From positions 66,092,001-66,156,000 of the forward strand of contig JANJGN010000021.1 of NCBI GenBank assembly GCA_026770705.1: a DNA stretch of 64,000 nt, given 5' to 3'. Below, piece by piece: positions 40,001 to 59,959 of this stretch. Positions within the stretch are counted from its first letter, which is position 1; every line of letters begins with the position of its first letter. Under the pieces are notes generated by a model. It worked only from the letters and a program-made list of their open reading frames with translations, was not told the origin of the DNA and ran no database searches. The position numbers and the translations under genes were made by a program. Source of the stretch: Isurus oxyrinchus. Its lineage: Eukaryota.

Positions 40001-43000
40001 CCCACCACCCTCTCTCCCCCATCCCCCCTCTCTCTCCACCATCCCCCCTCTCTCTCCCATCCCCCTCTCTCTCCCATCCCCCTCTCTCCCCCCATCCCCC
40101 CGCTCTCTCTCCGCCCCCCATCCCCCCTCTCTTCCCCCAATCCCCCCTCTCTCTCCCCACCATCCCCCCTCTCTCTCTCTCCCCCCATCCCCCTCCCCCC
40201 AATTCTCCCCATCCCCCCTCTCTCTCTCCAACCCCCCTCTCTCTCCCCCCCATTCCCCCGCTCTCTCTCCCCCCCTCTCTCTCCCCCATCCCTCCCTCTC
40301 TCTCTCCCCCATCCCCCTTCTCTCTCTCCCCCCATCCCCACCCTCTCTCTCCCCCCCATCCCCCCCATGTCTCCCCCATCCCCCCTCTCTCTCCCCCATT
40401 CCCCCCCTCTCTCCCCCCATCACTCCCCCATCCCCCCCTCTCTCTCTCTCCAACCCCCCTCTCTCTCCCCCCATCCCTCCTCCCCCCATCCCCCCTCCCT
40501 CCCTCTCCCCCATCCCCCCCATCTCTCCCCCATCCCCCCTCTCCCCCCATCCACCCCTCTCTCCCCCACTCCCCCCCATCCCCCTCCCCCCATCTCTCCC
40601 CACCCCCCCATCCCCCCTCTCTCCCCCCAACCCCCCTCTCTCTCCCCCCATCCCCCCTCTCTCCCCCATCCCCCCCATCTCACCCCCATCCCCCCTCTCT
40701 CTCACCCCCATCCTCCCCTCTCTCTCCCCCATCCCCCCCATCTCTCCCCCATCCCCCCCTCTCTCTCTCTCTCCAACCCCCCCTCTCCCTACCCCCATTT
40801 CCCCTCTTTCTCCCCCCATCTCCCCCTCTCCCTCCACCAAATCCTCCCCCTCTCCCCATCCCCCCTCCCTCCCCCCTCCCACATCTGTCCCCCCATTCCC
40901 CCCTCTCTCCCCCATCCCCCTCTCCCCCCATCCCCCCTCTCTCCCCCATCCCCCCTCTCCCTCTCCCCCACCCCCCTCTCTCTCACCTGTTTTCAGTTGG
41001 CTCTCTCCATACTCGAGGTATTTTCGCAGCCACTCGATGCAGGTTTGCTCCAGGTAACCTTTCAGCCCCTGGTTCCATGCCGTGTCCCGATCCCACTTGT
41101 TCTTGGTGATCTCTCCCCACGGGACCGTGGTGGACCAGACCATCTGATCCTTGTGGAAGTTGATGAGATCCTTCCCGTCCCAGCCGTACTGGTAAACCCC
41201 CGCGGTGGTGCCGTCGTCCCGCAACTCACAGCCGTACATCACCTGGAGGGTGTGAATCCCTGTCAAACAGAAACAGGGCCTCAGACCCGCACACACCCCG
41301 GCCCCGACCCCCGACCCCGGCCCCCGGCCCCCGGCCCCCGACCCCGACCCCTGGCCCGGACCCCGACCCCCGGCCCCCGACCCCCGGCCCGGACCCCGAC
41401 CCCCGGCCCGGACCCCGACCCCTGGCCCGGACCCCGACCCCCGGCCCCGGCCCCCGACCCCGACCCCTGGCCCGGACCCCGACCCCCGGCCCCCGACCCC
41501 GACCCCCGGCCCCCGACCCCGACCCCTGGCCCGGACCCCGACCCCCGGCCCCCGACCCCGACCCCCGGCCCGGACCCCGACCCCCGGACCCCGGCCCGAC
41601 CCCCGACCCCCGGCCCGACCCCCGACCCCCCACCCCGACCCCCGACCCCCGGCCCCGGCCCGGACCCCGACCCCCCGCCCGGACCCCGACCCCCGACCCC
41701 CGACCCCCGGCCCCCGACCCCGACCCCCGGCCCGGACCCCGACCCCCGACCCCCGGCCCGGACCCCGACCCCCGGCCCCCGACCCCTGGCCCCCGGCCCG
41801 GATCCCCACCCCCGACCCCCGGACCCCGACCCCCGGACCCCGCTCCCGCTCCCGGCTCTGACCCCCGGGATTATCAGAGTGAATGGTGGTGGGGGGGGGG
41901 GGTGCTGAGGACTCACCGCCGTTCTCGGTCTGGTTGGTCCGATCCTTGAGGGTCTGAATGTTGACCTTTCCCACCTGCTCCGAGCTCTGTGAATTCTGTG
42001 TATTCTGCACCCAGTACTCAGGGCCCACATTCTGCTCCATCCAGCGCTGCCGAGGGATCATCTTCCCCACATCACTGTCATAGTGAACAAACTCCAGCTC
42101 ATCCACATAACCGACCACCACAAACTCGGGCAGCCCGTCAATGGGGGTCATTGAGGTGTAGTGATAGCGGAGAGAGTGAGATCCTGGAACAGAGAGAGAG
42201 AGAGAGATCAGAGCGGGTGGGGGTGGGGGCGGGGGCGGGGGGCAGTCAGCACTCTCCGCCGCTCTCACCCCTCACACCGCTCCCACTATCTACCTCCCTG
42301 CTCCCACTGCCCCCAGGCCCCACCGCGTGTCAGGCTCTCCCCCAGCCAGCCCACCGGGAACATCCCCCTGCTCCACTGTACACCGCACAGCAATCAGCTC
42401 CTTCACCCCATGGCCGCAACGGGGAAGCCAAACACCCTCAGCACAGCGAGGGGCAACAGACAAACTGCTACACCCCCTGATCCCGGGAACAGCACAGAAC
42501 AGGGAAAGACAGCCACCCTCAATACAGTGTAAATAAACCCTGAGACAACATAACACAACACAGAGCCCCTGTAAATAAACCCCGAGACAACACAACACAA
42601 CACAGAGCCCCTGTAAATAAACCCCGAGACAACACAACACAACACAGAGCCCCTGTAAATAAACCCTGAGACAACACAACACAACACAGAGCCCCTGTAA
42701 ATAAACCCCGAGACAACACAACACAACACAGAGCCCCTGTAAATAAACCCCGAGACAACACAACACAGAGCCCCTGTAAATAAATCCTGAGACAACACAA
42801 CACAACACAGAGCCCCTGTAAATAAACCCTGAGACAACACAACACAACACACAGCCTCTGTAAATAAACGCTGAGACAACACAACACAACACAGAGACCC
42901 TGTAAATAAACCCCGAGACAACACAACACAACACAGAGCCTCTGTAAATAAACCCCGAGACAACACAACACAACACAGAGCCCCTGTAAATAAACCCCGA

Positions 43001-46000
43001 GACAACACAACACAACACTGAGCCCCTGTAAATAAACCCTGAGACAACACAACACAACACAGAGCCGCTGTAAATAAACCCCGCGACAACACAACACAAC
43101 ACAGAGCCCCTGTAAATAAATCCCGAGACAACACAACATAACACAGAGCCCCTGTAAATAAACCCTGAGACAACACAACACTGAGCCCCTGTAAATAAAC
43201 CCTGAGACAACACAACATAACACAGAGCCCCTGTAAATAAACTCCGAGACAACACAACATAACACAGAGCCCCTGTAAATAAACCCCGAGACAACACAAC
43301 ACAGAGCCCCTGTAAATAAACCCCGAGACAACACAACACAACACAGAGCCCCTGTAAATAAACCCCGAGACAACACAACACAACACTGAGCCCCTGTAAA
43401 TAAACCCTGAGACAACACAACATAACACAGAGCCCCTGTAAATAAACCCTGAGACAACACAACATAACACAGAGCCCCTGTAAATAAACCCCGAGACAAC
43501 ACAACATAACACAGTGCCCCTGTAAATAAACCCTGAGACAACACAGAGCCCCTGTAAATAAACCCTGAGACAACACAACACAACACTGAGCCCCTGTAAA
43601 TAAACCCTGAGACAACACAACACTGAGCCCCTGTAAATAAACCCTGAGACAACACAACATAACACAGAGCCCCTGTAAATAAACCCCGAGACAACACAAC
43701 ATAACACAGTGCCCCTGTAAATAAACCCTGAGACAACACAGAGCCCCTGTAAATAAACCCTGAGACAACACAACACAACACAGAGTCCCTGTAAATAAAC
43801 CCTTAGACAACACAACACAGAGCCCCTGTAAATAAACCCTGAGACAACACAACACAACACTGAGCCTCTGTAAATAAACCCTGAGACAACACAACACAAC
43901 ACAGAGCCTCTGTAAATAAACCCTGAGACAACACAACATAACACATGGCCCCTGTAAATAAACCCTTAGACAACACAACACAACACAGAGCCCCTGTAAA
44001 TAAACCCTGAGACAACACAACACAACACTGAGCCTCTGTAAATAAACCCTGAGACAACACAACACTGAGCCCCTGTAAATAAACCCTGAGACAACACAAC
44101 ACAACACAACACTGAGCCTCTGTAAATAAACCCTGAGACAACACAACACTGAGCCCCTGTAAATAAACCCTGAGACAACACAACATAACACACAGCCCCT
44201 GTAAATAAACCCTGAGACAACACAACACACAGCCTCTGTAAATAAACCCTGAGACAACACAACACTGAGCCCCTGTAAATAAACCCTGAGACAACACAAC
44301 ATAACACAGAGCCCCTGTAAATAAATCCTGAGACAACATAACACAACACACAGCCCCTGTAAATAAACCCTGAGACAACACATAACACACAGCCCCTGTA
44401 AATAAACCCTGAGACAACATGACACAACACAGAGTCCCTGTAAATAAACCCTCAGACAACATAACACAGAGCCCCTGTAAATAAACTCCGAGACAACACA
44501 ACACAACACAGAGCCCCTGTAAATAAACCCCGAGACAACACAACACAGAGCCCCTGTAAATAAACCCCGAGACAACACAACACAACACAGAGCCCCTGTA
44601 AATAAACCCCGAGACAACACAACACAACACTGAGCCCCTGTAAATAAACACCGAGACAACACAACACAACACAGAGCCTCTGTAAATAAACCCCGAGACA
44701 ACGCAACACAACACTGAGCCCCTGTAAATAAATCCTGAGACAACATAACACAACACAGAGCCCCTGTAAATAAACCCCGAGACAACACAACACAACACAG
44801 AGCCCCTGTAAATAAATCCTGACACAACATAACACAACACAGAGCCCCTGTAAATAAACCCTGAGACAACACAACACAGAGCCCCTGTAAATAAACCCTG
44901 AGACAACACAACACAACACAGAGCCCCTGTAAATAAACCTTGAGACAACACAACATAACACAGAGCCCCTGTAAATAAACCCTGAGACAACACAACACAA
45001 CACAGAGCACCTGTAAATAAACCCTGAGACAACACAACATAACAGAGCCCCTGTAAATAAATCCTGAGACAACATAACACAACACAGAGCCCCTGTAAAT
45101 AAACCCTGAGACAACACAACACAGAGCCCCTGTAAATAAACCCTGAGACAACACAACACAACACAGAGCCCCTGTAAATAAACCTTGAGACAACACAACA
45201 TAACACAGAGCCCCTGTAAATAAACCCTGAGACAACACAACACAACACAGAGCACCTGTAAATAAACCCTGAGACAACACAACATAACAGAGCCCCTGTA
45301 AATAAACCCCGAGACAACACAACAGAGCCCCTGTAAATAAACCCCGAGACAACACAACACAACACAGAGCCCCTGTAAATAAACCCCGAGACAACATAAC
45401 ATAACACAGAGCCCCTGTAAATAAACCCCGAGACAACACAATGCAGAGCCCCTGTAAATAAACCCTGAGACAACACAACACAACACAGAGCCCCTGTAAA
45501 TAAACCCCGAGACAACACAACACAGAGCCCCTGTAAATAAACCCCAAGACAACACAACACACAGCCCCTGTAAATAAACCCTGAGACAACACAACACAAC
45601 ACACAGCCCCTGTAAATAAATCCCGAGACAACACAACACAGAGCCCCGGCAAATAAACCCTGAGACAACACAACACAACACACAGCCCCTGTAAATAAAC
45701 CCTCAGACAACATAACACAGAGCCCCTGTAAATAAACCCCGAGACAACACAACACACAGCCCCTGTAAATAAACCCTGAGACAACACAACACAACACACA
45801 GCCCCTGTAAATAAATCCCGAGACAACACAACACAGAGCCCCGGCAAATAAACCCTGAGACAACACAACACAACACACAGCCCCTGTAAATAAACCCTGA
45901 GACAACACAACATAACACAGAGCCCATGTAAATAAACCCCGAGACAACACAACACAGAGCCCCGGCAAATAAACCCTGAGACAACACAACACAACACAGA

Positions 46001-49000
46001 GCCCCTGTAAATAAACCCTGAGACAACACAAATAACACAGAGCCCCTGTAAATAAACCCCGAGACAACACAACACAACACAGAGACCCTGTAAATAAACC
46101 CTGAGACAACACAACACAACAGAGCCCCTGTAAATAAACCCTGAGACAACACAACACAACACAGAGCCTCTGTAAATAAACCCTGAGACAACACAACACA
46201 ACACAGAGCCCCTGTAAATAAACCCCGAGACAACACAACACAATACACAGCCCCTGTAAATAAACCCCGAGACAACACAACACAGAGCCCCTGTAAATAT
46301 ACCGTGAGACAACACAACATAACACAGAGCCCCTGTAAATAAACCCTGAGACAACACAACACAACACAGAGCCCCTGTAAATAAACCCTGAGACAACACA
46401 ACACAGAGCCCCTGTAAATAAACCCTGAGACAACACAACACAACACAGAGCCTCTGTAAATAAACCCTGAGACAACACAACACAACACAGAGCCCGTGTA
46501 AATAAACCCTGAGACAACACAACACAACACAGAGCCTCTGTAAATAAACCCTGAGACAACACAACACAACACAGAGCCCGTGTAAATAAACCCCGAGACA
46601 ACACAACACAATACACAGCCCCTGTAAATAAACCCCGAGACAACACAACATAACACAGAGCCCCTGTAAATAAACCCTGAGACAACATAACACAACACAG
46701 AGCCCCTGTAAATATACCCTGAGACAACACAACATAACACAGAGCCCCAGTAAATAAACCCTGAGACAACATAACACAGTGCCCCTGTAAATAAACCCTG
46801 AGACAACACAACACAACACAGAGCCCCTGTAAATAAACCCTGAGACAACACAACACAGAGCCTCTGTAAATAAACCCTGAGACAACACAACACAACACAG
46901 AGCCCCTGTAAATAAACCCTGAGACAACACAACACAACACAGAGCCTCTGTAAATAAACCCTGAGACAACACAACACAACACTGAGCCCCTGTAAATAAA
47001 TCCTGAGACAACATAACACAACACAGAGCCCCTGTAAATAAACCCTGAGACAACACAACACAGAGCCCCTGTAAATAAACCCTGAGACAACACAACACAA
47101 CACAGAGCCCCTGTAAATAAACCTTGAGACAACACAACATAACACAGAGCCCCTGTAAATAAACCCTGAGACAACACAACACAACACAGAGCACCTGTAA
47201 ATAAACCCCGAGACAACGCAACACAACACTGAGCCCCTGTAAATAAACCCTGAGACAACACAACACAGAGCCCCTGTAAATAAACCCCGAGACAACACAA
47301 CACAACAGAGCCCCTGTAAATAAATCCTGAGACAACATAACACAACACAGAGCCTCTGTAAATAAACCCCGAGACAACACAACACAACACAGAGCCCCTG
47401 TAAATAAATCCTGAGACAACATAACACAACACAGAGCCCCTGTAAATAAACCCTGAGACAACACAACACAGAGCCCCTGTAAATAAACCCCGAGACAACA
47501 CAACACAACACAGAGCCCCTGTAAATAAATCCTGAGACAACATAACACAACACAGAGCCTCTGTAAATAAACCCCGAGACAACACAACACAACACAGAGC
47601 CCCTGTAAATAAATCCTGAGACAACATAACACAACACAGAGCCCCTGTAAATAAACCCTGAGACAACACAACACAGAGCCCCTGTAAATAAACCCTGAGA
47701 CAACACAACACAGAGCCTCTGTAAATAAACCCCGAGACAACATAACACACTGAGCCCTTATAAATAAACCCTGAGACAACACAACACAACACACAGCCCC
47801 TGTAAATAAACCCCGAGACAACACAACACAGAGCCCCTGTAAATAAACCCCGAGACAACACAACACAACACAGAGCCCCGGTAAATAAACCCCGAGACAA
47901 CACAACACAACACAGAGCCCCTGTAAATAAACCTTGAGACAACACAACACAACACAGAGCCCCTGTAAATAAACCCCGAGACAACACAACACAACACAGA
48001 GCCCCTGTAAATAAACCCTGAGACAACACAACAGAGCCCCTTTAAATAAACCCCGAGACAACATAACACGGAGTCGCTGTAAATGAACCCCGAGACAACA
48101 TAACACAACAGTGCCCTTGTAAATAAACACCAAATTACAACCCAGGCACTGACTTGGATTTGAGGGGGTATCTGCTTCATTCTTGACCTCAGTTGCACCA
48201 AGTTGAGAGATTGAGGTTCAGGAAGTGGAGCGTGTGACTTACAGTCGGCAGGATTGGGGAATCGATTGGAGACGGTGAAAGACGGAGCATGGTGTCTGGT
48301 CCTGACTAACAGGCACCATGAATAAATAAAGCAAATTACTGTGAATGCTGAAAATCTGAAATAAAAGCTTAAAATACTGGAAAAGCTCAGCAGGTCTGGC
48401 AGCATCTGTGGAGAGAGAAACAGAGTTAACATTTCAAGTCCATATGACTTATTTTCTGAGAAGAAAAATCACATGGACTCAAAACATTAACTCTGTTTCT
48501 CTCACCACAGATGCTGCAAGACCTGCTGAGTTTTTCTAGCATTTTCTGTTTTTATTTTAGTTCCAATGTATTTTCTATCCCAGGGATGTCAGAGTTAGAC
48601 TACGAGAAGGATAGTCACACTGGTCACCAAGACACATGGAATAGCGGAGACGGAACAGAAAGTTTAGGGTTATAGTGAGTGACTAACATTGGGTTTCGGG
48701 AACCTACAAGAATCTCTTGTTAGGGACAGAATGACTGAGCACGTGAGTTAATGTGTGTTGGTCAGAGAGAGAGAGGGAGAGAGAGAAGAGAGAGTCATCG
48801 ATTTGTCTGATCCTCTTCCTGGCACAGTCTGAGATTAAACCAGTCAGTTTGCAAACCTAGGCCCCATTCCACAAACCTGATTCAGGAGAGCCTGCCCTGG
48901 GTGTTCAAATTTTAGTTCCGGGGTTCGGGTGGGTGGGGATTGCTCGGGGGGTAGGGTGTTGACTTTGTCCCAGCTATAAATGGACAGCAAAACAAAAAAA

Positions 49001-52000
49001 ATCCCTTCGGCCGTCACACTCCCTCATTCCCCCAACACACTCCCCATGTCACATCCATGGCAACTGAAGACACCCAATGTCCTCTATAGCCTCTATACCA
49101 ATCTATTCCCCTCTAACCAACCAATGGCCCCCCTATAGTCTCTATGCCAACCTATTCCCCTCTAACCAACCAATGGCACCCTATAGCCCCTATGCCTATC
49201 TACCCACCCCAAGGCCCTTTATAGCTGCTATGCAAATGTAGTGCCAACTCATACCAACCCATGCTCCCAACTACACTTCTCCCTTACATCCTCCATGCCA
49301 ACTCACCATGAGCAGACTTAAGGACACATGCTGAGACGAAATAAAGTTCTTAGTTTTTATTGCAGACTTTACTTTTATAAAAACACCATCATTCATAAAA
49401 GCGCATTCAATTCATAATCCTTTATAAAAACATACATTTCATTTTGGTGCTTGTTCCCTTATAAAAGCAAGCATTTGTATTCATAGCCCCTCATCAAAGA
49501 CTTTATAAACACTTGCAGCTGTAAATCAACTGTCAACTGATAGGCACCCCACTGTGATAATGATAGGCTGTGCAACCAGTCATGCAGCACAAATCATATA
49601 AGAGAAGCCACAGGTTTAAGTCAGAGTGAAATAGCAAGCGCTGTTTTTTTTATACTGGTGGATGCTTTTTCTTTAAAGTTAAAGGCCAGGAGAGTTATAT
49701 CCCTTCACCGCTTGATAGTTCCAATGAGTTTATCCACTTTTTATGCACATTCATGTCAATTTTTAACAACCCCAAATGACACCTGACCTCTCCCAAAGGT
49801 GTCCCTGGACCTATCCAAAAAGGTACCTTACCTCACCAAAAGGGTATCCTATCTCTCCAAAGGTCTTCGGCAGTTTCAGACATTCTCCCAAAGGTCTCCA
49901 GCCCACAAGTTGTGTTTTAGACATCCCACTAATGAAAATTGGCTCTGTATGGAGGCAGTTGCACTTTTACATGTGCAGCTACCTCTGTGAACCACAGATT
50001 TGCAAAAAGGAACCCAGCCCTGTTCCCATGTCAAAAATGATCTCTGGCACCATGTTGACTAAGATGGAGATCATCTCAGTCTTTATGAAAATTTGGGCCT
50101 TGGTGTCTTATGTGACCCTGAGATGAGCTTCTGATCACATATTTGCATCATCACTAAGACCTCCTATTTCCGCTTCTGTAACATTGCCCAACTTCACCAC
50201 TGCTCAGCTCATCTGCCACTGAAACCCTCATTCATACCTTCCTTACCTTTGGACTTGAATATTCCAACACACTCCTGGCTCATATCCCACTTTCCATCCT
50301 CTGTAAACTTCAGGTGATTCAGAACTCTGCTGCCCACATCTTATCTTGCACCATCTCATTCCCTCTCACTCCCTGTGCTCACTGACCTACACTGGCTCCC
50401 ACTAAAGCAACATTTTCATTTTAAAATTCTCATTCTTCTTTTCCAGCTTCTCCATGGCCTTGGCCTTCCCCATCTCAGTAATCACCTCCAGCTCCACAAC
50501 CCTCTGACATCTCTGAACTCCTCTAATCCTGGCCTCTTGAACATCTCTGATTTCATTGCTCCACTATTGGTGGCTGTGTCTTCAGCTAACTAGACCCCAA
50601 GCTCTGGAATACCCTTCCTTAACCTCTCCACCTCTTTACCTCGCTCTCCCCCTTTAAGACGAACGGTGCCATATTTTGTTTCATAATGTTCCTGTGAAGC
50701 ATCTTGGGACATTTCGTTGAGTTAAAGGTGCTACATAAATATAAGTTGTTGTTGGTAAAGTTAACCTGACTAATCTCATTGAATATTTTGAGCAGGTCAC
50801 GAACATGGAATATTAAGGAGTGTCTGTGGATGTTACTTCTATGGGTTTCCAGAAGGCTTTCGATAAGGTTCCACACAAGAGACTGTTAGGAAAAATGAGA
50901 GTGAATAGAAATGGAGAGGGTCAACTGACTTGGGTTTGAAATTTTTTTGGGAGGTAGGAGACAGAGATTGGGGTTAAAGGGGTAAGTACTTTGATTGGTT
51001 GGATTTGACTAGTGGATTCCAGGGTTCTGTACTGAGGCCTCAACTGTTCACCACATTTATAAGTGAATCTGTGAAGGAATAGAGAGTTGTGCATCTAATT
51101 TGTGGATGACATAAAGTTGGGAGGATCAGTAAGTTGTGTCGATGGGGGCAGGAAGTTACAAAGGGACATTAACTGATGAAGGAGTGAGTAAAACTGTAAC
51201 AGATAGAGTTTAATGTGGGAAAGTGTGAACTCACCCACTGTGGAGCTAAAAAAGATCAAACAGAATATTTCCTAAATGGTGAGAAACTGGGAACTGTGGA
51301 TGAAACATAGAAACATAGAAACTAGGAGCAGGAGTAGGCCATTCGGCCCCTCGAGCCTGCTCCACCATTTATTATGATCATAACTGATCATCCAACTCAA
51401 TAGCCTGCTCCTGCTTTCTCCCCAAACCCTTTGATCCCTTTTGCCCCAAGAGCTATATCTAACTCCTTCTTGAAAACATGCAATATCTTGGTCTCAACTA
51501 CTTTCTGTGGTAGCGAATTCCACAGGCTCACCACTCTCTGGGTGAAGAAACTTCTCCTCATGTCAGTCCTAAACGGTCTGCTCCATATCCTCAGACTGTG
51601 ACCCTTGGTTCTGGACTCCCCCACTATCGGGAACATCCTTCCTGCATCTAACCTGTCTAGCCCTGTTAGAATTTTTTAGGTTTCTAAAATCCCCCTCATT
51701 CTTCTGAACTCCAGCGAATATAATCCTAAGCGACTCAATCTCTCCTCATATGTCGGTCCCGCCATCCCAGGAATTAGTCAGGTAAACTATATAGCAAGTA
51801 CATCTTTCCTCAGATAGGGAGACACAATATTCCAGGTGTGGTCTCACCAAGGCTCTGTACAATTGCAGCAAGGCATCCCTGTGCCTGTACTCGAATCCTC
51901 TGGCTATGAAGGCCAACACACCATTTGCCTTAACAAAAACAAAAACAGAATTACCTGGAAAAACTCAGCAGGTCTGGCAGCATCGGCGGAGAAGAAAAGA

Positions 52001-55000
52001 GTTGACGTTTCGAGTCCTCATGACCCTTCGACAGAACTTGAGTTCGAGTCCAAGACTTGGACTGGAAAAGTGGTGGTGAAATGGAATTAAGATATAGATC
52101 AGCTGTGATCTAATTGAATGGTGGAACAGACTGAAGGGGCTGAATAGCCTCATTCTCTTCCCATGGTTCACACTTCTCTCTGTTTCATTCCCCTCTTTCA
52201 CACTGTTTCACTCCTCTTTCTCTCACTGTTTCACTCATCTCTTTCTCTTGTTTCGCACCTCTCTCTCTTTTGCTCCTCTCTCTTTCGCTCTTTGTTTTGC
52301 TCCTCTTTCACTCGTTAAACTTCACTTCCCTATCTGGCTGATTCTGTTTCACTCCTCCCTCCCTCTCCCCCGCTTCGCTCCTCTCTCTCCCTCCCTCTCC
52401 CCCGCTTCGCTCCTCTCTCTCCCTCCCTCTCCTCCGCTTCGCTCCTCTCTCTCCCTCCCTCTCCCCCGCTTCGCTCCTCTCTCTCCCTCCCTCTCCCCCG
52501 CTTCGCTCCTCTCTCTCCCTCCCTCTCCTCCGCTTCGCTCCTCTCTCTCCCTCCCTCTCCCCCGCTTCGCTCCTCTCTCTCCCTCCCTCTCCCCCGCTTC
52601 GCTCCTCTCTCTCCCTCCCTCTCCTCCGCTTCGCTCCTCTCTCTCCCTCCCTCTCCTCCGCTTCGCTCCTCTCTCTCCCTCCCTCTCCCCCGCTTCGCTC
52701 CTCTCTCTCCCTCCCTCTCCCCCGCTTCGCTCCTCTCTCTCCCTCCCTCTCCCCCGCTTCGCTCCTCTCTCTCCCTCCCTCTCCCCCGCTTCGCTCCTCT
52801 CTCTCCCTCCCTCTCCCCCGCTTCGCTCCTCTCTCTCCCTCCCTCTCCCCCGCTTCGCTCCTCTCTCTCCCTCCCTCTCCCCCGCTTCGCTCCTCTCTCT
52901 CCCTCCCTCTCCCCCGCTTCGCTCCTCTCTCTCCCTCCCTCTCCTCCGCTTCGCTCCTCTCTCTCCCTCCCTCTCCCCCGCTTCGCTCCTCTCTCTCGCT
53001 CCCTCTCCTCCGCTTCGCTCCTCTCTCTCCCTCCCTCTCCCCCGCTTCGCTCCTCTCTCTCCCTCCCTCTCCTCCGCTTCGCTCCTCTCTCTCCCTCCCT
53101 CTCCCCCGCTTCGCTCCTTTCTCCGTTTCATTCTCCTCTCTCTCTCTCTGTTTCATTCTCCTCTCTCCGTTTCACTCTCCTCTCTCTGTTTCACTCTCCT
53201 CTCTCTCTCTCTCCCTGTTTCACTCTCCTCTCTCTCTCCCTGTTTCACTCTCCTCTCTCTCTCTCCCTGTTTCACTCTCCTCTCTCTCTCTCCCTGTTTC
53301 ACTCTCCTCTCTCTCTCTCCCTGTTTCACTCTCCTCTCTCTCTCTCCCTGTTTCACTCTCCTCTCTCTCTCTCTCCCCCTGTTTCACTCTCCTCTCTCTC
53401 TCTCCCTGTTTCACTCTCCTCTCTCTCCCTGTTTCACTCTCCTCTCTCTCCGTTTCACTCTCCTCTCTCTCCCTGTTTCACTCTCCTCTCTCTCCGTTTC
53501 ACTCTCTTCTCTCTCCCTGTTTCACTCTCCTCTCTCTCCATTTCTCTCCCCTCTCCCTCTCTCCCTGTTTCACTCTCTCTCTCTCCCTGTTTCACTCTCC
53601 TCTCTCTCTCTCTCCCTATTTCACTCTCCTCTCTCTCTCTCCCTGTTTCACTCTCCTCTCTCTCTCCGTTTCACTCTCCTCTCTCCCTGTTTCACTCTCC
53701 TCTCTCTCTCCGTTTCACTTTCCTTTCTAGCTGTTTCACTCTCCTCTCTCTCTCCGTTTCACTCTCCTCTCTCTCTCTCCGTTCCACTCTCCTCTCTCTC
53801 TCTCCCTGTTTCACTCTCCTCTCTCTCTCTCCCTGTTTCACTCTCCTCTCTCTCTCTCTCCGTTTCACTCTCCTCTCTCTCCCTCTGTTTCACTCTCCTC
53901 TCTCTCTCTCCCTCCCTGTTTCACTCTCCTCTCTCTCTCTCTCCCTTCCTGTTTCATTCTCCTCTCTCTCTCCCTCCGTTTCACTCTCCTCTCTCTCCCT
54001 CCCTGTTTCACTCTCCTCTCTCTCTCTCCCTGTTTCACTCTCCTCTCGCTCCGTTTCACTCTCCTCTCTTTCCCTGTTTCACTCTCCTCTCTCTCCCTCC
54101 GTTTCACTCTCCTCTCTCTCCCTCCCTGTTTCACTCTCCTCTCTCTCTCCCTGTTTCACTCTCCTCTCTCTCTCCCTGTTTCACTCTCCTCTCTCTCTCC
54201 CTGTTTCATTCTCCTCTCTCTCTCTCTCCCTGTTTCACTCTCCTCTCTCTCTCTCTCCCTGTTTCACTCTCCTCTCTCTCTCCCTGTTTCACTCTCCTCT
54301 CTCCGTTTCACTCTCCTCTCTCTCTCCGTTTCACTCTTCTCTCTCTCTCCCTGTTTCACTCTCCTCTCTCTCTCCCTCTGTTTCACTCTCCTCTCTCTCT
54401 CCGTGTTTCACTCTCCTCTCTCTCCCTGTTTCACTCTCCTCTCTCTCTAGCTGTTTCACTCTCCTCTCTCTCTCCCTCTGTTTCACTCTCCTCTCTCTCT
54501 CCGTGTTTCACTCTCCTCTCTCTCCCTGTTTCACTCTCCTCTCTCTGTTTTACTCTCCTCTCTCTCTCTCCCTGTTTTACTCTCCTCTCTCTCTCTCCCT
54601 GTTTCACTCTCCTCTCNNNNNNNNNNNNNNNNNNNNNNNNNNNNNNNNNNNNNNNNNNNNNNNNNNNNNNNNNNNNNNNNNNNNNNNNNNNNNNNNNNNN
54701 NNNNNNNNNNNNNNNNNNNNNNNNNNNNNNNNNNNNNNNNNNNNNNNNNNNNNNNNNNNNNTCTCTCTCTCCGTTTCACTCTCCTCTCTCTCTCCCTCTG
54801 TTTCACTCTCCTCTCTCTCTCCCCCTCCCTGTTTCACTCTCCTCTCTCTCTCCCTCCGTTTCACTGTCCACTCTCTCCCTCCCTGTTTCACTCTCTCCTC
54901 TCTCTCTCCCTGTTTCACTCTCCTCTCTCTCTCCCTGTTTCACTCTCCTCTCTCTCTCTCCCTGTTTCACTCTCCTCTCTGTCTCTCTCTCCCTGTTTCA

Positions 55001-58000
55001 CTCTCCTCTCTGTCTCTCTCTCTCTCCCTGTTTCACTCTCCTCTCTCTCTCTCCGTTTCACTCTCCTCTCTCTCTCTCCGTTTCACTCTCCTCTCTCTCT
55101 CCCTCTGTTTCACTCTCCTCTCTCTCTCCCCCTCCCTGTTTCACTCTCCTCTCTCTCTCCCTCCGTTTCACTGTCCACTCTCTCCCTCCCTGTTTCACTC
55201 TCTCCTCTCTCTCTCCCTGTTTCACTCTCCCCTCTCTCTCTCTCCCTGTTTCACTCTCCTCTCTCTCTCCCTGTTTCACTCTCCTCTCTGTCTCTCTCTC
55301 CCTGTTTCACTCTCCTCTCTGTCTCTCTCTCTCTCCCTGTTTCACTCTCCTCTCTCTCTCTCCGTTTCACTGTCCTCTCTCTCTCCCTGTTTCACTCTCC
55401 TCTCTCTCTCCCTGATTCACTCTCCTCTCTCCCTGTTTCACTCTCCTCTCTCTCTCCCTGTTTCACTCTCCTCTCTCTCTCCCTGTTTCACTCTCCTCTC
55501 TCTCTCCCTCCCTGTTTCACTCTCCTCTCTCTCCCTCCCTGTTTCACTCTCCTCTCTCTCTCTCCCTGTTTCACTCTCCTCTCTGTCTCTCTCTCTCCCT
55601 GTTTCACTCTCCTCTCTGTCTCTCTCTCTCCCTGTTTCACTCTCCTCTCTGTCTCTCTCTCCCTGTTTCACTCTCCTCTGTCTCTCTCTCTCCCTGTTTC
55701 ACTCTCCTCTCTCTCTCTCCGTTTCACTCTCCTCTCTCTCTCTCCGTTTCACTCTCCTCTCTCTCCCTGTTTCACTCTCCTCTCTCTCTCCCTGATTCAC
55801 TCTCCTCTCTCCCTGTTTCACTCTCCTCTCTCTCTCCCTGTTTCACTCTCCCTCTCTCCGTTTCACTCTCCTCTCTCTCTCCCTCCCTGTTTCACTCTCC
55901 TCTCTCTCCCTCCCTGTTTCACTCTCCTCTCTCTCTCTCCATTTCACTCTCCTCTCTCTCTCTCCGTTTCACTCTCCTCTCTCTCCCCCTGTTTCACTCT
56001 CCTCTCTCTCTCTCCCTGTTTCACTCTCTTCTCTCTCTCTCCCTGTTTCACTCTCCTCTCTCTCTCTCTCCGTTTCACTCTCCTCTCTCTCTCTCTCTCT
56101 CCGTTTCACTCTCCTCTCTCTCTCTCCGTTTCACTCTCCCCTCTCTCTCTCTCCCCCTATTTCACTCTCCTCTCTCTCTCCGTTTCCCTCTCTTCTCTTT
56201 CCCTCTCTCTGATTCACAGCACTCTTTCTCCCTCAATCTGATTCATTTCTTCTTTCTCTCTCTGATGCACTCCCCTCTGTCTCTCTCTTTCTCTCTGATC
56301 ATTTCCAGGAACTCAGCTGCCTGACAGATTTAAACATTCCCTATATATTCTGCCTGGTAACAGTGACATCAAGCTAACACAAATTCTCATTGGCAAATTC
56401 CACTCAGGTCTCCCAACCCCATTAATCCCCATGGAAACTCCCTGTCACTGACTTGTCAGACTGTCTCTTAGCAACAGGGGAGCAGTGGGGGGACGGGTGG
56501 AGTAGGATCCTGACTGGGAGTGTGGGGAGGGGGGACACGGTAATGGGGTAATGGGAGTGAGGAGAGGGCAAAGGGCGATGGGGTAATGGGAATGAGGGGA
56601 GAGAGGACACAGGGCGATGGGGTAATGGGAGTGTGGGGAGAGGGGACACAGAGTGATGGTGTAATGTATCCCACATTCTACCCTCTGTAAACCTCAGATC
56701 ATCCAAAACCCACAGCCTGTGTCTGAACTCACACGAAGTCCTGTTCGACTATCACCTCTATTCTTGCTCACATACATTGCCTCCTGGTGAAGCAACATCT
56801 CAATTTTAAAATGTTCATCTTTCTCTTCAAATCCCTCTGTGGTCTCACCCCTCCCTATCTCTGTCATTTCCTCCACCCTCACAACCCTCCAAGGTATCCC
56901 CACTCCTCTAACGTTGGTCTCCTGAGTATTTCTGGTTTTAACGCTCTGCCATTGTTAGCCATTTCTTCAGGTGCCTAGGCCCCACCCTCTGGAATTCCTT
57001 CCTACATCCCTCCACCTCACCTTCCTCCTTTAAGACACTCCTTAAAATCTACCTCTTTGATCAAGCATTTGGTCATCTGGCCATAATATCTCCTTATGTA
57101 GCTCCTGTGAATGACATTGGGATGTTTTATTATATTAAAGGTGCTATATCAATCCGAATTGTTGTAATCTTTACACAATTTTTTATTGGCAGAGACAAAC
57201 ACCCACCTCCCACCCCAACAACCACAGTGTAAATTTACCCCTATTCATAGGATCACAAGTAAATCCCCAATTCATGCCCACCGCCTGAACACAACGAAAC
57301 ACTCGATTAACATACACTTAACAGAAAGGGTTTAATCGATTAGATATGGAGAAAACACTCCCTCTGGTGAGAGAGACAAGAACAAGGGACAACATCTTAA
57401 AATTCAACTGGGCCATTCAGGAGGGAGATCAGGAAATGGTTTCTCACATAAAGCATAGTGGGAATCTAGAACGTTCTCTCCATAAAGCTGTGGATATGGG
57501 GTGGTTGAAATTGAAGCTTTCAAAATGGACAGACTTTTACAAAAACAAAATACTGCAGATATTAGAAATGTGAAATAAGAGAAAATGCTGGAAATCCTCA
57601 GCAGGTTTGGCAGCTTCTAAAGAGTGAGAGACAGAGTTACAGTTTCAGCTCGATGATGTTTGATCAGAATGGCACCTCTGTTTCTCTCTGCATAAACAGC
57701 TCCTTGTAGTGTCACAGGCTCACAGCTGGGGAATGAGGTACAGATCGGTCAGGAGCTATTTAGTTGGTGAAAGAAGATCGAGAGTCTCCTCTCACTGTGT
57801 CTCTCTCTCTGATCCCACTCTCCAGTCTCGTCACTTTAAACCCCAGTCCCCAGCACCATTTCTCTATCACTCTCTAGCCCCACAGCTCTAACCCTGAGGC
57901 CCCACATTCTCTCTCCAGCCCCACACCCCTAACCCCCAGGCCCTGCACCCTCTCTCCAGCCCCACATCCCTAAACATCAGGCCCTGCAACCTCTCTCCAG

Positions 58001-59583
58001 CCCCACATCCATAAACATCAGGTCCTGCAACCTCTCTCCAGCCCCACACCCCTAACCCTCAAACCCCGCACTCTCTCTCCAGCTCCACACCCCTAACCCT
58101 CAGGCCCCGCACTCTCTCTCCAGCTCCACACCCCTAACCCTCAGGCCCCGCACTCTCTCTCCAGTCCCATACCCCTAACCCTCAGGCCCCGCACTCTCTC
58201 TGCAGCCTCATACCCCTAACCTTCAGGCCCCGCACTCTCTCTCCAGCCCCACACCCCTAACCCTTAGGCCCCACACTCTCTCTCCAGTCCCATGCCCCTA
58301 ACCCTCAGATCCTGCACTCTCTCTCCAGCCCCATACGCCTAAACCTCAGACCCCACACTCTCTAGCCCCATACCCCTAACCCTCAGACCCCACACTCTCT
58401 CTCTAGCCCCATACCCCTAACCCTCAAGCCCCGCACTCTCTCTCAGCCCCATACGCCTAACCCTCAGGCCCCCAAAATCTCTCTCCACCCCCATGCCCCT
58501 AACCCTCAGGCCCCGCACTCTCTCTCCAGCCCCACACCCCTAACCTTCAGGCCCCGCACTCTCTCTCCAGTCCCATACCCCTAACCCTCAGGACCCACAC
58601 TCTCTCTCCAGCCCCACACCCCTAACCCTCAGACCCCACACTCTCTCCAGCCCCACACCCCTAACCCTCAGACCCCAGACTCTCTCTCCAGCCCTACACC
58701 CCAAATCCATAGCCCTGCACCCTCTCTCCAGCCTCATACCCCTAACCCTCAAGCCCCGCACTCTCTCTCAGCCCCATACGCCTAACCCTCAGGCCCCCAA
58801 AATCTCTCTCCAGCCCCATGCCCCTAACCCTCAGGCCCCGCACTCTCTCTCCAGCCCCACACCCCTAACCCTCAGACCCCACACTCTCTCTCCAGTCCCA
58901 TACCCCTAACCCTCAGGCCCCGCACTCTCTCTATAACCCCACACCCCTAACCCTCAGACCCCACACTCTCTCTCCAGCCTCATACCCCTAACCCTCAGAC
59001 CCCACACTCTCTCTCCAGCCTCAATACCCCTAACCCTCAGACCCCACTCTCTCTCCAGCCCCACACCCCTAACCCTCAGGCCCCACACTCTCTCTCCAGC
59101 CCCACACCCCTAACCCTCAGGACCCACACTCTCTCCCCAGCCCCATGCCCCTAACCCTCAGGCCCCGCACTCTCTCTCCAGCCCCATACGCCTAAACCTC
59201 AGACTCCAAAAGCATTTCTCACGCTTCAGCTCAGGATCCCTGACCCTCAGTCTAATTTCCCCACCACCACCATTCTGCTCGTGATTCTCTCTCTCTCTGC
59301 CCCTCCTCAGGTCCAGTACCCAGCACTGAGACCCTCTCTGACCCCATTACCCACTGACTGAGGGTTAATACCCCAGTACCAGATACTGAGACCCTCTCTG
59401 ACCCCGTTACCCACTGACTGAGGGTTAATACCCCAGTACCAGATACTGAGACCCTCTCTGACACCATTACCCACTGACTGAGGGTTAATACCTCAGTACC
59501 AGACATTGAGACCCTCTCTGACCCCATTACTCACCTGCAGAGACCCCTCCACACAGAAGGGTCAGTAGTATTAACCTCAACAT
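30978..59583 (-). CDS. UAA: MHC class I alpha (heavy) chain, classical-type, 7 coding exons, 344 aa
   Basis: Exons of 49+267+273+264+102+33+47 nt = 1035 nt join in frame via GT-AG phase-1 introns: leader, alpha1, alpha2, alpha3 (Ig-C1), TM, two cytoplasmic exons, TAA. Anchors Y7, Y59, R84, T143, K146, W147, Y159, Y171 present. The symbol follows shark classical class I naming and is an inference. Confidence 0.93.
31308..31340 (-). CDS. MHC class I exon 6, cytoplasmic (AGQKTGYNPAK)
   Basis: Acceptor ttgttttacag|CG, donor A|GTAAGT, 33 nt, with the conserved cytoplasmic YxxA motif. Confidence 0.88.
31480..34060 (-). mobile_element. Old CR1-type LINE remnant filling intron 5
   Basis: ORF2 C-terminus ESRTRGDH...RKHFYIQRVIDIWNLLP (31600-31851), decayed RT, and an endonuclease-like GGVAL segment near 33915. 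Many stops. Confidence 0.75.
34399..34500 (-). CDS. MHC class I exon 5, connecting peptide and transmembrane helix (EPKADSMIPIIVGVVIAVLLIALAIVAFVFYKKK)
   Basis: Acceptor tgtctttcag|AA, donor G|GTAGGA, 102 nt. Hydrophobic stretch followed by a KKK stop-transfer. Confidence 0.94.
34678..36363. repeat. Intron 4 minisatellite, 44-50-bp unit (CACAGCTCAGCACTGACCCTCTCTCCTGTACAGAGAGAGACTGGATCCTCA)
   Basis: About 35 copies, most with GGATCC. Begins about 20 nt from the exon 4 donor. Confidence 0.97.
36383..36646 (-). CDS. MHC class I exon 4, alpha3 Ig-C1 domain
   Basis: Acceptor ctctctcag|TT, donor G|GTAAGA, 264 nt. LSCVATGFYP, RPNHDGTYQ, FSCVV. Confidence 0.96.
36770..40985. repeat. Intron 3 polypyrimidine/polypurine low-complexity tract (CCCCCAT/CTCTCT), about 4.2 kb
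   Basis: Almost only C/T on the + strand, running up to the exon 3 donor. Confidence 0.97.
40987..41259 (-). CDS. MHC class I exon 3, alpha2 domain (GIHTLQVMYGC...TKNKW...YLEQTCIEWLRKYL)
   Basis: Acceptor tttgacag|GG, donor G|GTGAGA, 273 nt. Both disulfide cysteines, DGKD, TKxKW, Y159, W167 and Y171 present. Confidence 0.97.
41290..41865. repeat. Intron 2 GC/CpG-rich repeat (CCCCGA/CCCCGG/CCCGGA)n
   Basis: Fills most of the 657-bp intron between alpha1 and alpha2. Confidence 0.97.
41917..42183 (-). CDS. MHC class I exon 2, alpha1 domain (GSHSLRYHY...EYW...RTNQTENG)
   Basis: Acceptor ctctgttccag|GA, donor G|GTGAGT, 267 nt. Motifs GSHSLRY, PEF..VGYVD, YDS, P..RW, YW and the N86-type glycosylation site NQT. 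Confidence 0.97.
42526..48130. repeat. Intron 1 minisatellite, 32/37/42-bp unit GAGA(CAACA)nCAGAGCCCCTGTAAATAAACCCY
   Basis: About 140 copies with a variable internal pentamer. Gives the spurious Cys/Val/Leu ORFs on the minus strand. Confidence 0.98.
48325..48560. mobile_element. Palindromic Penelope-like element (same family as 27453-27676)
   Basis: ctcagcaggtctggcagcatctgtggagagagaaacagagttaac and its inverted arm. Confidence 0.7.
49080..49200. repeat. ~49-bp tandem duplication (about 2.4 copies)
   Basis: ctatag...ctattcccctctaaccaaccaatgg recurs at 49084 and 49133, with a partial copy at 49181. Confidence 0.8.
50095..50753 (+). mobile_element. L2 LINE 3' fragment
   Basis: LTDLHWLP...FKILIL...LHGL ORF2 C-terminus; tail aaaggtgctacataaatataagttgttgttg. 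Confidence 0.8.
50753..51300 (+). mobile_element. CR1 RT fragment
   Basis: Decayed LTNLIE, FQKAFDKVPHKRLL and GSVL motifs. Confidence 0.75.
51303..51930 (-). mobile_element. CR1 3' fragment with (GAAACATA)n tail
   Basis: ORF 51397-51636 ESRTKGHSL...FFTQRVVSLWNSLP and an octamer tail at about 51302-51320. Confidence 0.85.
51933..52050. mobile_element. Penelope-like terminal-repeat half element
   Basis: ctggaaaaactcagcaggtctggcagcatc...gagttgacgtttcgagtc. Confidence 0.65.
52360..53118. repeat. Homogeneous 32-bp minisatellite (CGCTTCGCTCCTCTCTCTCCCTCCCTCTCCYC)
   Basis: About 23 near-identical copies. Confidence 0.97.
53120..56200. repeat. (GTTTCACTCTCC(TC)n CCT) minisatellite, spanning the assembly gap
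   Basis: About 20-30-bp units with a variable TC run. Confidence 0.97.
54617..54761. other. Assembly gap (145 N)
   Basis: N run inside the repeat, so the true intron 1 length is uncertain. Confidence 1.
56685..57165 (+). mobile_element. L2 LINE 3' fragment
   Basis: KQHLNFKMFIFLFKSLCGLTPPYL; tail aaaggtgctatat...ttgttgt. Confidence 0.75.
57325..57690 (+). mobile_element. CR1 fragment followed by a degenerate Penelope-like arm (about 57543-57690)
   Basis: MEKTLPLVRETRTRDN; aaatgctggaaatcctcagcaggtttggcagc. Confidence 0.6.
57885..59205. repeat. 41-bp minisatellite containing CCCTAACCCTCA
   Basis: Unit CCCCACACCCCTAACCCTCAGGCCCCGCACTCTCTCTCCAG, about 32 copies. Confidence 0.95.
59313..59534. 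repeat. 60-bp tandem repeat (about 3.7 copies) starting at the exon 1 donor
   Basis: Lines 59341, 59401 and 59461 align in exact 60-bp register. Confidence 0.95.
59535..59583 (-). CDS. MHC class I exon 1, signal peptide MLRLILLTLLCGGVSA
   Basis: ATG at 59583, 16 codons with a hydrophobic core plus 1 nt, then donor G|GTGAGT. Phase matches exon 2 (G+GA = Gly1 of GSHSLRY). Lies directly downstream of the SXY promoter. Not in the ORF track. Confidence 0.9.
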
Positions 59584-59704
59584 TTTCCTGAATGAATTAT
59601 TTGAGAGTAATCCTATATCCAGTGATAATCCTGTTCCACCTGCACTCCACCTCTTTGTGTCTCTCTGGATCCTGGTCTCTATGCACTTCACCCAGGGCTG
59701 ACTG

Positions 59705-59818
59705 TATTAAACTTCGGTGCCTCCACGCTGATTGGTTCAATGGGACACTAATGTCCAATTATAATATAAACAGCCTGTGAGCCATCAGTCTCTGGGTAGA
59801 AGGTTCCTGGGTAGGTTG
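59705..59818 (-). promoter_or_regulatory. MHC SXY enhanceosome module plus proximal CCAAT and TATA-like box
   Basis: Sense strand: CAACCT (S, 59818-59813), 16 bp, CCCAGAGACTGATG (X1, 59796-59783) overlapping TGGCTCA (X2-like), 20 bp, ATAATTGG (Y, 59762-59755), 19 bp, CCAATCAGCGT (59735), then TTTAATA (59711-59705). Confidence 0.8.
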
Positions 59819-59935
59819 TGTTCCTTTCAAAATAAACTTTTCCGATATAGTGAACTATCCAATCACAGAAATACTGTGAAGAACATCATCAGTTACCAGG
59901 GAGAATAAACTTTACAAGGTTTGAGAATTAAATTA

Positions 59936-59946
59936 GAAACTGAAAG
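59936..59946. promoter_or_regulatory. ISRE / IRF element
   Basis: GAAACTGAAAG fits GAAANNGAAA, about 120 bp upstream of the S box, on the side expected for a class I promoter. Confidence 0.6.
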
Positions 59947-59959
59947 GAGTTTGATCCAG

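What the first reader, a model, noticed from the sequence alone, without database searches (positions are those of the whole stretch)
59705..59946. Full mammal-like class I promoter (ISRE - S - X1/X2 - Y - CCAAT - TATA-like) with canonical spacing
Seen: CAACCT-16bp-CCCAGAGACTGATG(GCTCA)-20bp-ATAATTGG-19bp-CCAATCAGCGT, plus an ISRE upstream. Established: SXY modules bind RFX, CREB/ATF and NF-Y with tightly constrained spacing, and the S box helps determine NLRC5 versus CIITA use. From memory, not checked: the S box, the S-X spacer (CCTTCT) and CCAATCAGCGT resemble HLA-A/B promoters, while X1 resembles class II X boxes. Inference: an ancestral-like hybrid module with a class-I-type S box and class-II-type X box, implying deep conservation of the enhanceosome.
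Basis: partly seen in the sequence, partly recalled or inferred. Interest (0 to 1): 0.8.

Follow-up and report, generated by a model that had tools for sequence, protein, structure and literature searches.

The report
Shark MHC class I promoter, doubled SXY
This is the working promoter of a highly expressed classical-type shark MHC class I gene. It carries the interferon element and S-X-Y switch known from mammalian class I genes, with the same spacing as in mouse, and the S-X-Y part is present twice in tandem.

Summary

RNA-type contigs from two studies are identical to the window from 59683 or 59655 down to the donor after 59535. They then continue into the alpha1 exon at 42183, 17.35 kb away. 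This is therefore the used promoter of a strongly expressed, nurse-shark-UAA-like class I gene.

It lies 104 bp upstream of the first, in the same register. The ISRE (59945-59936) belongs to this distal module.

A strict X-Y pattern hits only these two sites in 64 kb (0.03 expected). The published mouse H2-K ISRE-S-X-Y construct, slid without gaps over both strands, has its two best matches exactly at the two modules. None of 5000 shuffles reached both scores. S-to-X and X-to-Y spacings equal those of H2-K.

The "class-I S box plus class-II X box hybrid" reading is not resolved, because box-wise identities to mouse H2-K and H2-Eb differ by only 0-3 nt.

Factor binding is untested.

Other first-reader notes of this scan report X-Y modules at other class I genes of this genome; I did not check them.

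The parts
59936..59945 (-). ISRE core (GAAACTGAAA on + strand), 14 bp upstream of the distal S box
   Evidence: 4 such cores in the window, 0.71 expected. Its position relative to S is within 2 nt of that in mouse H2-K.
59917..59921 (-). Distal S-box core AACCT
   Evidence: 27 nt from ACCT to ACTG of X1, as in H2-K and H2-Eb.
59887..59900 (-). Distal X1 box CCTGGTAACTGATG, containing a perfect RFX half-site GGTAAC
   Evidence: It is 11/14 identical to H2-Eb X1, and an 11-nt run AACTGATGATG is identical to H2-Eb.
59884..59888 (-). Distal X2-like TGATG (one mismatch from the CRE half-site TGACG)
59859..59866 (-). Distal Y box GTGATTGG (inverted CCAAT), 20 bp after GATG
59821..59843 (-). Degenerate ISRE/IRF-like stretch (GGAAAAGTTTATTTTGAAAGGAA) at the place in the proximal unit that matches the ISRE of the distal unit
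   Evidence: There is no canonical GAAANNGAAA core here. Weak.
59813..59818 (-). Proximal S box CAACCT
59798..59803 (-). CCTTCT in the S-X spacer, in register with the same hexamer of mouse H2-K
59783..59796 (-). Proximal X1 box CCCAGAGACTGATG
59778..59784 (-). Proximal X2-like TGGCTCA (one mismatch from AP-1 TGASTCA)
59755..59762 (-). Proximal Y box ATAATTGG (inverted CCAAT), about -77..-73
59725..59735 (-). CCAAT box CCAATCAGCGT (AACCAATCAG fits the NF-Y consensus RRCCAATSR), about -53..-49
   Evidence: No difference from organism B DNA over 59704-59741.
59704..59711 (-). TATA-like TTTAATAC, about -29..-22
59535..59683 (-). Exon 1: about 100 nt of 5'UTR, ATG at 59583, leader MLRLILLTLLCGGVSA, phase-1 donor G|gtgagt after 59535. 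The 5' end is that of the longest RNA contig, so the true TSS is at or just upstream of it.
42184..59534 (-). Intron 1, 17,351 bp, mostly satellites and transposable-element fragments
41917..42183 (-). Exon 2 (alpha1)
   Evidence: PF00129, 1.4e-25; best solved structure 6LUP, nurse shark class I.
40987..41259 (-). Exon 3 (alpha2)
   Evidence: 6LUP, 6e-35
36383..36646 (-). Exon 4 (alpha3, C1-set Ig)
34399..34500 (-). Exon 5 (connecting peptide / transmembrane)

Best explanation
The region 59950-59683 (minus strand) is the active promoter of a classical-type (nurse-shark-UAA-like) MHC class I gene.

It contains two tandem S-X1-X2-Y modules whose starts are 104 bp apart:
- Distal module: about -239 to -177. 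An ISRE lies directly upstream of it, and it has the better RFX half-site and Y box.
- Proximal module: about -136 to -73. Its positions match those usually given for mammalian class I promoters.

A consensus CCAAT box (-53) and a TATA-like box (-29) follow. Transcription starts near 59683-59693.

Inferred mechanism, by analogy with mammals:
- An RFX complex binds X1, a CREB/ATF-type factor binds X2, and NF-Y binds Y. They bind cooperatively because the spacing is fixed.
- This forms a platform for an NLR co-activator (NLRC5 and/or CIITA; both have orthologues in whale shark).
- IRF factors on the ISRE add interferon inducibility.
- NF-Y on the CCAAT box, together with the TATA-like box, positions the start site.

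Shown here: the motifs, their spacing, their non-random similarity to the mouse module, the transcription and the splicing.
Inferred: factor binding, co-activator choice, and which module contributes what.
For: 1. Usage.
- RNA-type contigs of organism A are identical to the window from 59683 (X1: 2120 nt, word depth 1297) and from 59655 (X2: depth 822) down to the donor after 59535.
- They continue with 30 letters that match only 42153-42182, the start of the alpha1 exon.
- This is the only leader-like exon between alpha1 and the window end.

2. Gene type.
- The alpha1 and alpha2 exons match PF00129, and their best solved structure is 6LUP, nurse shark class I.
- The usual peptide-terminus residues can be read in the translations.

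3. Motifs.
- The strict X-Y pattern gives 2 hits in 64 kb, both here on the sense strand, against 0.03 expected.

4. Similarity to mouse.
- The 91-nt H2-K ISRE-S-X-Y (primers printed in PMC4374748) was slid without gaps over both strands.
- The best match is 59943-59853 (44/91) and the second best is 59839-59749 (42/91).
- In 5000 dinucleotide shuffles of the promoter, a score of 44 or more occurred twice, 42 or more occurred 13 times, and both together never.

5. Spacing.
- ACCT to ACTG is 27 nt in H2-K, H2-Eb and both shark modules.
- ACTG to ATTGG is 30 nt in H2-K and both shark modules, and 29 nt in H2-Eb.
- This agrees with the 16 bp and 20-22 bp distances reported for NLRC5-bound modules (PMC4374748).

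6. Selection-like pattern.
- The two modules match at 24 of about 25 box positions but at only about 14 of 66 positions elsewhere.

7. Literature.
- CIITA and NLRC5 orthologues exist in whale shark (PMC8455134).
- W/S, X and Y motifs are reported in teleost class I promoters (PMC7573153; PMC6523485).
Against:
- Both X2 boxes are poor CRE matches.
- The proximal X1 lacks a canonical RFX half-site, and the proximal Y has weak NF-Y flanks.
- Window-wide, the identity scores of 44 and 42 are only slightly above the best background value of 41, which falls in satellites.
- Contigs cannot fix the exact TSS.
- In salmon cells the enhanceosome seemed dispensable for IFN-gamma induction (PMC7573153), so motif presence does not prove use.
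- No NF-kB (enhancer A) site was found within 320 bp.
Confidence: 0.72

Rival explanations
1. Only one module works. The distal ISRE-S-X-Y unit is the real enhanceosome site. The proximal unit is a decayed tandem copy that now contributes little beyond an NF-Y site and spacing. The reverse is also possible: the proximal unit is functional and the distal one is a relic.
For: - The distal unit has the canonical ISRE core, a perfect RFX half-site GGTAAC and a TGATTGG Y box.
- The proximal unit has none of these in canonical form.
- The proximal 'ISRE' is degenerate.
Against: - Both units keep all four boxes in exact register, while the sequence between the boxes has no more identity than chance. 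That is hard to explain if one copy were neutral.
- The proximal unit is the one at the mammal-like distance from the TSS.
Confidence: 0.2
2. It is a chance assembly of short AT-rich motifs in front of a gene. The promoter works through CCAAT/TATA and IRF sites only, and the S/X similarity has no function.
For: - Each box is short.
- X2 is weak.
- Window-wide identity to H2-K is only marginally above the background maxima.
- The enhanceosome appeared dispensable in salmon cells (PMC7573153).
Against: - Two strict X-Y hits against 0.03 expected.
- The top two of about 128,000 registers fall exactly here, in the sense orientation.
- 0 of 5000 shuffles reproduce both scores.
- The spacing is identical to mouse.
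Confidence: 0.05
3. It is a hybrid or dual-specificity promoter. The proximal module is NLRC5-type (class-I S box and CCTTCT spacer) and the distal module is CIITA-type (class-II-like X1-X2). This is a refined version of the reader's hybrid idea.
For: - The distal X1-X2 shares an 11-nt identical run with H2-Eb and scores 11/14 and 7/10 against H2-Eb, compared with 9/14 and 5/10 against H2-K.
- The proximal module shares AACCT and CCTTCT with H2-K, and its X2 scores 6/10 against H2-K and 4/10 against H2-Eb.
Against: - The differences are 1-3 nt, measured against a single mouse gene per class.
- Both shark S cores are AACCT, like H2-K.
- The distal S and spacer are closer to H2-K (14/26) than to H2-Eb (9/26).
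- Both modules have the H2-K X-Y spacing of 30 nt.
Confidence: 0.1

Closest known systems
Mammalian MHC class I proximal promoter (ISRE, then the S/W-X1-X2-Y 'SXY' module, then CCAAT and TATA), e.g. mouse H2-K as bound by NLRC5 (Ludigs et al. 2015, PMC4374748)
   Same: - Same order and orientation of elements.
- The ISRE is directly upstream of S, within 2 nt of its H2-K position.
- S-X spacing (27 nt) and X-Y spacing (30 nt) are identical.
- Shared AACCT S core, CCTTCT spacer, ACTG-TG in X1 and ATTGG in Y.
- CCAAT and a TATA-like box lie below Y.
- The proximal module lies about -136 to -73 from the start.
   Different: - The S-X-Y unit is present twice in tandem, 104 bp apart.
- The ISRE accompanies the distal unit, about 250 bp from the start.
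- X2 is not a TGACGC-type CRE.
- No NF-kB enhancer A was found.
- Binding of RFX, CREB, NF-Y or NLRC5 is untested.
MHC class II S-Y module (CIITA enhanceosome), e.g. mouse H2-Eb1, and the extra distal S'-Y' modules of class II loci
   Same: - Same box order and same S-X spacing.
- The distal X1-X2 shares an 11-nt identical run with H2-Eb.
- The distal Y box is of the TGATTGG type.
- Having more than one module per gene recalls class II loci.
   Different: - It drives a class I gene.
- X-Y spacing is 30 nt, against 29 nt in H2-Eb.
- The S core is AACCT, against GACCT.
- The second module is adjacent, not kilobases away.
Teleost classical class I promoters (trout and salmon UBA), reported to carry W/S, X2, Y, ISRE and GAS motifs (PMC7573153, PMC6523485)
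   Same: Non-mammalian class I promoters with mammal-like motifs and interferon elements.
   Different: - No teleost sequences were available here for alignment.
- No GAS site was found here.
- Cartilaginous fish are a deeper branch.

Membership tests
MHC SXY (enhanceosome) promoter module | Boxes in the order S, X1, X2, Y on the sense strand, upstream of the TSS of an MHC gene | tested here: met
   Searches give the order and strand. Searches show that the gene is transcribed from just downstream. Searches show that the gene is class I.
MHC SXY (enhanceosome) promoter module | Tightly fixed spacing (S-X about 16 bp, X-Y about 20-22 bp; PMC4374748) | tested here: met
Measured as ACCT to ACTG (27 nt) and ACTG to ATTGG (30 nt), they are identical to mouse H2-K.
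MHC SXY (enhanceosome) promoter module | X1 is an RFX-type site | tested here: inconclusive
   The distal X1 holds a perfect RGYAAC half-site. The proximal X1 does not, but is 10/14 identical to the mouse X1 boxes.
MHC SXY (enhanceosome) promoter module | X2 is a CRE-like site for CREB/ATF | tested here: inconclusive
   Only one-mismatch versions are present: TGATG in the distal module and TGGCTCA in the proximal one.
MHC SXY (enhanceosome) promoter module | Y is an inverted CCAAT box for NF-Y | tested here: met
   ATTGG is present in both modules at the fixed distance. The flanks are good in the distal module and weak in the proximal one.
MHC SXY (enhanceosome) promoter module | Occupancy by RFX5/RFXAP/RFXANK, CREB and NF-Y, and recruitment of NLRC5 or CIITA | not testable with these tools
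   This needs ChIP, EMSA or reporter assays. Only the existence of shark CIITA and NLRC5 orthologues is on record (PMC8455134).
MHC SXY (enhanceosome) promoter module | Conservation of the boxes in orthologous and paralogous promoters | not tested
Organism B contigs cover only 59591-59741 and 59921-60000. Notes of the scan on other class I promoters were not checked.
NLRC5-type (class I) as opposed to CIITA-type (class II) SXY | Distinctive S box and selected X positions (PMC4374748) | tested here: inconclusive
   Box-wise identities to one mouse gene of each class differ by 0-3 nt. The published logos are in figures that are not held.
ISRE | GAAANNGAAA core next to the promoter module | tested here: met
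   59945-59936. Interferon inducibility is not testable here.
Classical (UAA-type) shark MHC class I gene | Alpha1, alpha2 and alpha3 exons with peptide-terminus-binding residues, closest to nurse shark UAA, and high ubiquitous expression | tested here: met
   (6LUP is the best hit for both alpha1 and alpha2). Contig word depth is 1297. Polymorphism and lineage naming were not tested.

The most novel reading that the evidence does not exclude
The classical class I gene of this shark is driven by a double enhanceosome. Two ISRE-S-X-Y-type units lie exactly 104 bp (about ten helical turns) apart. Both are kept by selection since an old tandem duplication. Possibly one has class-I-like and one has class-II-like X1-X2 features, so that NLRC5- and CIITA-type co-activators could both act on a single ancestral-style promoter.
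Probability: 0.25. Interest if true: 0.65.

Novelty: new variant of a known kind. Interest (0 to 1): 0.5.

Why it matters
The SXY enhanceosome is the central switch of antigen presentation in mammals. Reviews call it conserved across vertebrates, but I found no description of it for a cartilaginous-fish class I gene in the paper library.

This locus is a transcript-verified shark class I promoter whose S-X-Y spacing is nucleotide-for-nucleotide that of mouse H2-K. That pushes the fixed geometry of the module back to the base of the jawed vertebrates.

It also gives a concrete substrate for testing two things with shark NLRC5 and CIITA: when class I and class II specificity of the S box arose, and what a tandem pair of modules does.

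Tried and rejected
- Word search: the alpha3 ORF gave only two short proteins, from Cetorhinus maximus (88% identity) and Scyliorhinus torazame.
- Big representative search: not run. Its 50%-identity representatives would have been useless without the look-up tool, and the protein's identity was not in doubt.
- Metagenome scan with a 32-mer of the core promoter: 0 hits.
- Phage collection search: no match, and irrelevant.
- Full-text search for motif strings: returned only unrelated primers.
- No paper on shark class I promoters was found.
- The search of earlier findings by sequence: blank.
- Rejected, another leader exon nearer to alpha1: none exists.
- Rejected, the promoter as a member of a high-copy repeat: no extra contigs of organism B were laid on it at 85% likeness or more, and there is no other copy in the window.

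Full report
**What is there**

The finding lies on the minus strand. Read 5' to 3' on that strand, the sequence holds the following:
- an ISRE core, TTTCAGTTTC, at 59945-59936;
- CAACCT at 59818-59813, followed by 16 bp;
- CCCAGAGACTGATG at 59796-59783, followed directly by GCTCA;
- ATAATTGG at 59762-59755, 20 bp after GATG;
- CCAATCAGCGT at 59735-59725, 19 bp further;
- TTTAATAC at 59711-59704;
- an ATG at 59583 that opens MLRLILLTLLCGGVSA, ending in a phase-1 donor (G|gtgagt) after 59535.

**The gene**

On the same strand downstream lie class I exons with proper splice sites:

| Exon | Coordinates |
|---|---|
| alpha1 | 42183-41917 |
| alpha2 | 41259-40987 |
| alpha3 | 36646-36383 |
| transmembrane | 34500-34399 |

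- Searched exon by exon, alpha1 and alpha2 match Pfam MHC_I (1.4e-25 and 1.9e-25) and alpha3 matches C1-set.
- The best solved structure for both alpha1 and alpha2 is 6LUP, nurse shark class I.
- The usual peptide-terminus residues are readable in the translations.
- A word search with the alpha3 ORF found an 88%-identical basking shark fragment.

**The promoter is used**

Only one leader-like exon exists between alpha1 and the end of the window. The single read-laying run gave these results:
- Organism A, run X1: a 2120-nt contig of word depth 1297, identical to the window over 59534-59683.
- Organism A, run X2 (another study): a contig of depth 822, identical over 59534-59655.
- Both contigs continue with 30 letters that occur once in the window, at 42153-42182, the first bases of the alpha1 exon.
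- Exon 1 is therefore spliced across a 17,351-bp intron of satellites and transposable-element debris, and the gene is highly expressed.
- The contigs' 5' ends are at 59683 (organism A) and 59693 (organism C, 6 differences). These lie 18-28 nt below the first T of the TATA-like box.

Taking 59682 as +1, the elements sit as follows:

| Element | Position |
|---|---|
| TATA-like box | -29 |
| CCAAT | -53 |
| Proximal Y | -77 |
| Proximal X1 | -114 |
| Proximal S | -136 |

**A second module**

- AACCT at 59921-59917;
- CCTGGTAACTGATG at 59900-59887, containing a perfect RFX half-site GGTAAC;
- GTGATTGG at 59866-59859, again exactly 20 bp after GATG.

The ISRE lies 14 bp upstream of this distal S box, so it belongs to the distal unit. 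The two units are 104 bp apart and in register. Self-identity over the region peaks at offset 104, at 0.37 against about 0.26 at other offsets. The matches are confined to the boxes: about 24 of 25 box positions match, but only about 14 of 66 positions between the boxes do. This fits an old tandem duplication, or two independently built modules. In either case only the box positions have been preserved.

**Is it more than chance?**

- The pattern RACNGATG-N23-ATTGG occurs twice in the 64-kb window, both times here on the sense strand, against 0.03 expected.
- For an outside reference I used the mouse H2-K and H2-Eb SXY constructs, whose primers are printed in Ludigs et al. 2015 (PMC4374748).
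- I slid the 91-nt H2-K ISRE-S-X-Y without gaps along both strands of the whole window. The best register is 59943-59853 (44/91, the distal unit). The second best is 59839-59749 (42/91, the proximal unit).
- The best values elsewhere are 39-41, mostly in satellites.
- In 5000 dinucleotide-preserving shuffles of 60000-59600, the top score reached 44 twice and 42 thirteen times. A pair of 44 and 42 never occurred.

**Spacing**

| Distance | H2-K | H2-Eb | Distal | Proximal |
|---|---|---|---|---|
| ACCT (S) to ACTG (X1) | 27 nt | 27 nt | 27 nt | 27 nt |
| ACTG to ATTGG (Y) | 30 nt | 29 nt | 30 nt | 30 nt |

They agree with the 16-bp and 20-22-bp distances reported for NLRC5-occupied modules. The proximal unit also shares the hexamer CCTTCT in the S-X spacer with H2-K, in register. 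In the distal unit the ISRE sits within 2 nt of its H2-K position relative to S.

**Class-I-type or class-II-type?**

Box-wise identities:

| Segment | Distal vs H2-K | Distal vs H2-Eb | Proximal vs H2-K | Proximal vs H2-Eb |
|---|---|---|---|---|
| S core and flank (14 nt) | 7 | 5 | 7 | 7 |
| S-X spacer (12 nt) | 7 | 4 | 7 | 6 |
| X1 (14 nt) | 9 | 11 | 10 | 10 |
| X2 (10 nt) | 5 | 7 | 6 | 4 |

- The distal X1-X2 shares an 11-nt identical run with H2-Eb.
- Against one reference gene per class, these differences are too small to assign either module to a class.

**Weak points**

- Both X2 boxes are one-mismatch CRE or AP-1 look-alikes.
- The proximal X1 has no canonical RFX half-site, and the proximal Y has poor NF-Y flanks.
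- There is no NF-kB or GAS site within 320 bp.
- Transposable-element sequence starts near 59985-59995, so anything further upstream has been displaced.

**Conservation**

- Short DNA contigs of organism B cover 59591-59741 with 8 differences. All of these lie at 59615-59703, and none lies in the TATA-like and CCAAT stretch 59704-59741.
- Organism B contigs also cover 59921-60000 with 1 difference, and the ISRE is unchanged.
- Nothing was laid on 59742-59920. With such short contigs this says nothing.

**Literature**

- Reviews state that SXY is conserved across vertebrates (PMC7281430).
- Teleost class I promoters are reported to carry W/S, X2, Y and ISRE motifs (PMC7573153; PMC6523485).
- In salmon cells the enhanceosome factors seemed dispensable for IFN-gamma induction.
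- Whale shark has direct CIITA and NLRC5 orthologues (PMC8455134).
- I found no paper in the library that describes a shark class I promoter.
- Other first-reader notes of this scan mention X1-X2-Y modules before other class I genes of this genome, and a followed-up set of class II X-Y modules. I could not check them.

**Verdict**

- This is a real, transcript-verified promoter of a classical-type shark class I gene. Its layout is ISRE, S-X-Y, CCAAT and TATA-like box, and its internal geometry equals that of mouse H2-K.
- It is a variant of the known kind, because the S-X-Y unit is doubled in tandem and the ISRE is attached to the distal copy.
- The enhanceosome mechanism (RFX, CREB/ATF and NF-Y as a platform for NLRC5 and/or CIITA, plus IRF on the ISRE) is inferred, not shown.

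Noticed in passing
window 59313-59534 (minus strand: start of intron 1): A 60-bp tandem repeat (3.7 copies, 93% alike) begins exactly at the exon-1 splice donor. Each copy repeats a donor-like CAGTGGGTAATGGGGTCAGAGAGGGTCTCAG resembling the true GCAGgtgagtaatggggtcagagagggtctcaa. Organism B DNA shows a 'goes back 90' joint here, which suggests copy-number variation. This resembles the giant splice-donor repeat noted elsewhere in this genome (s1-868611).
   Followed up: partly
window 42184-59534: Intron 1 of the class I gene is 17.35 kb. It is almost all satellite arrays (42-bp unit at 42528-48128, CT-rich 25-32-bp units at 52175-56205, 41-bp unit at 57870-59202) plus LINE fragments. It is nevertheless spliced efficiently, since the mRNA contig depth is about 1300.
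   Followed up: partly
window 11-24136: A 24-kb array of a 19-bp C-rich satellite (CCGTCCCCGTCCCGTGTCA, about 1260 copies) lies downstream of the gene.
   Followed up: no
window 59985-61033: Transposable-element sequence abuts the promoter about 40 bp upstream of the ISRE. A short match to another copy lies at 26672-26716, and a LINE reverse-transcriptase ORF lies at 60639-61033 on the minus strand. The junction region 59921-60000 is shared with organism B (1 difference), so the insertion predates the split of the two organisms. Any older upstream enhancer, such as an NF-kB site, would have been displaced.
   Followed up: partly
window 59534-59693, run X9 (organism C): A third species has a transcript with the same exon 1 (6 differences). 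It is spliced to an alpha1 exon that starts differently, so the leader and 5'UTR are shared across species or paralogues. Five of its six differences are the same as in organism B DNA.
   Followed up: no
window 28460-28469, 33809-33818, 53713-53722: Three further ISRE cores (GAAANNGAAA) occur in the window, making 4 in all against 0.71 expected. The one at 33809 is on the gene's strand, downstream of the transmembrane exon.
   Followed up: no
window 54617-54761: A run of 145 N lies inside the CT-rich satellite of intron 1. It was left as it is.
   Followed up: no
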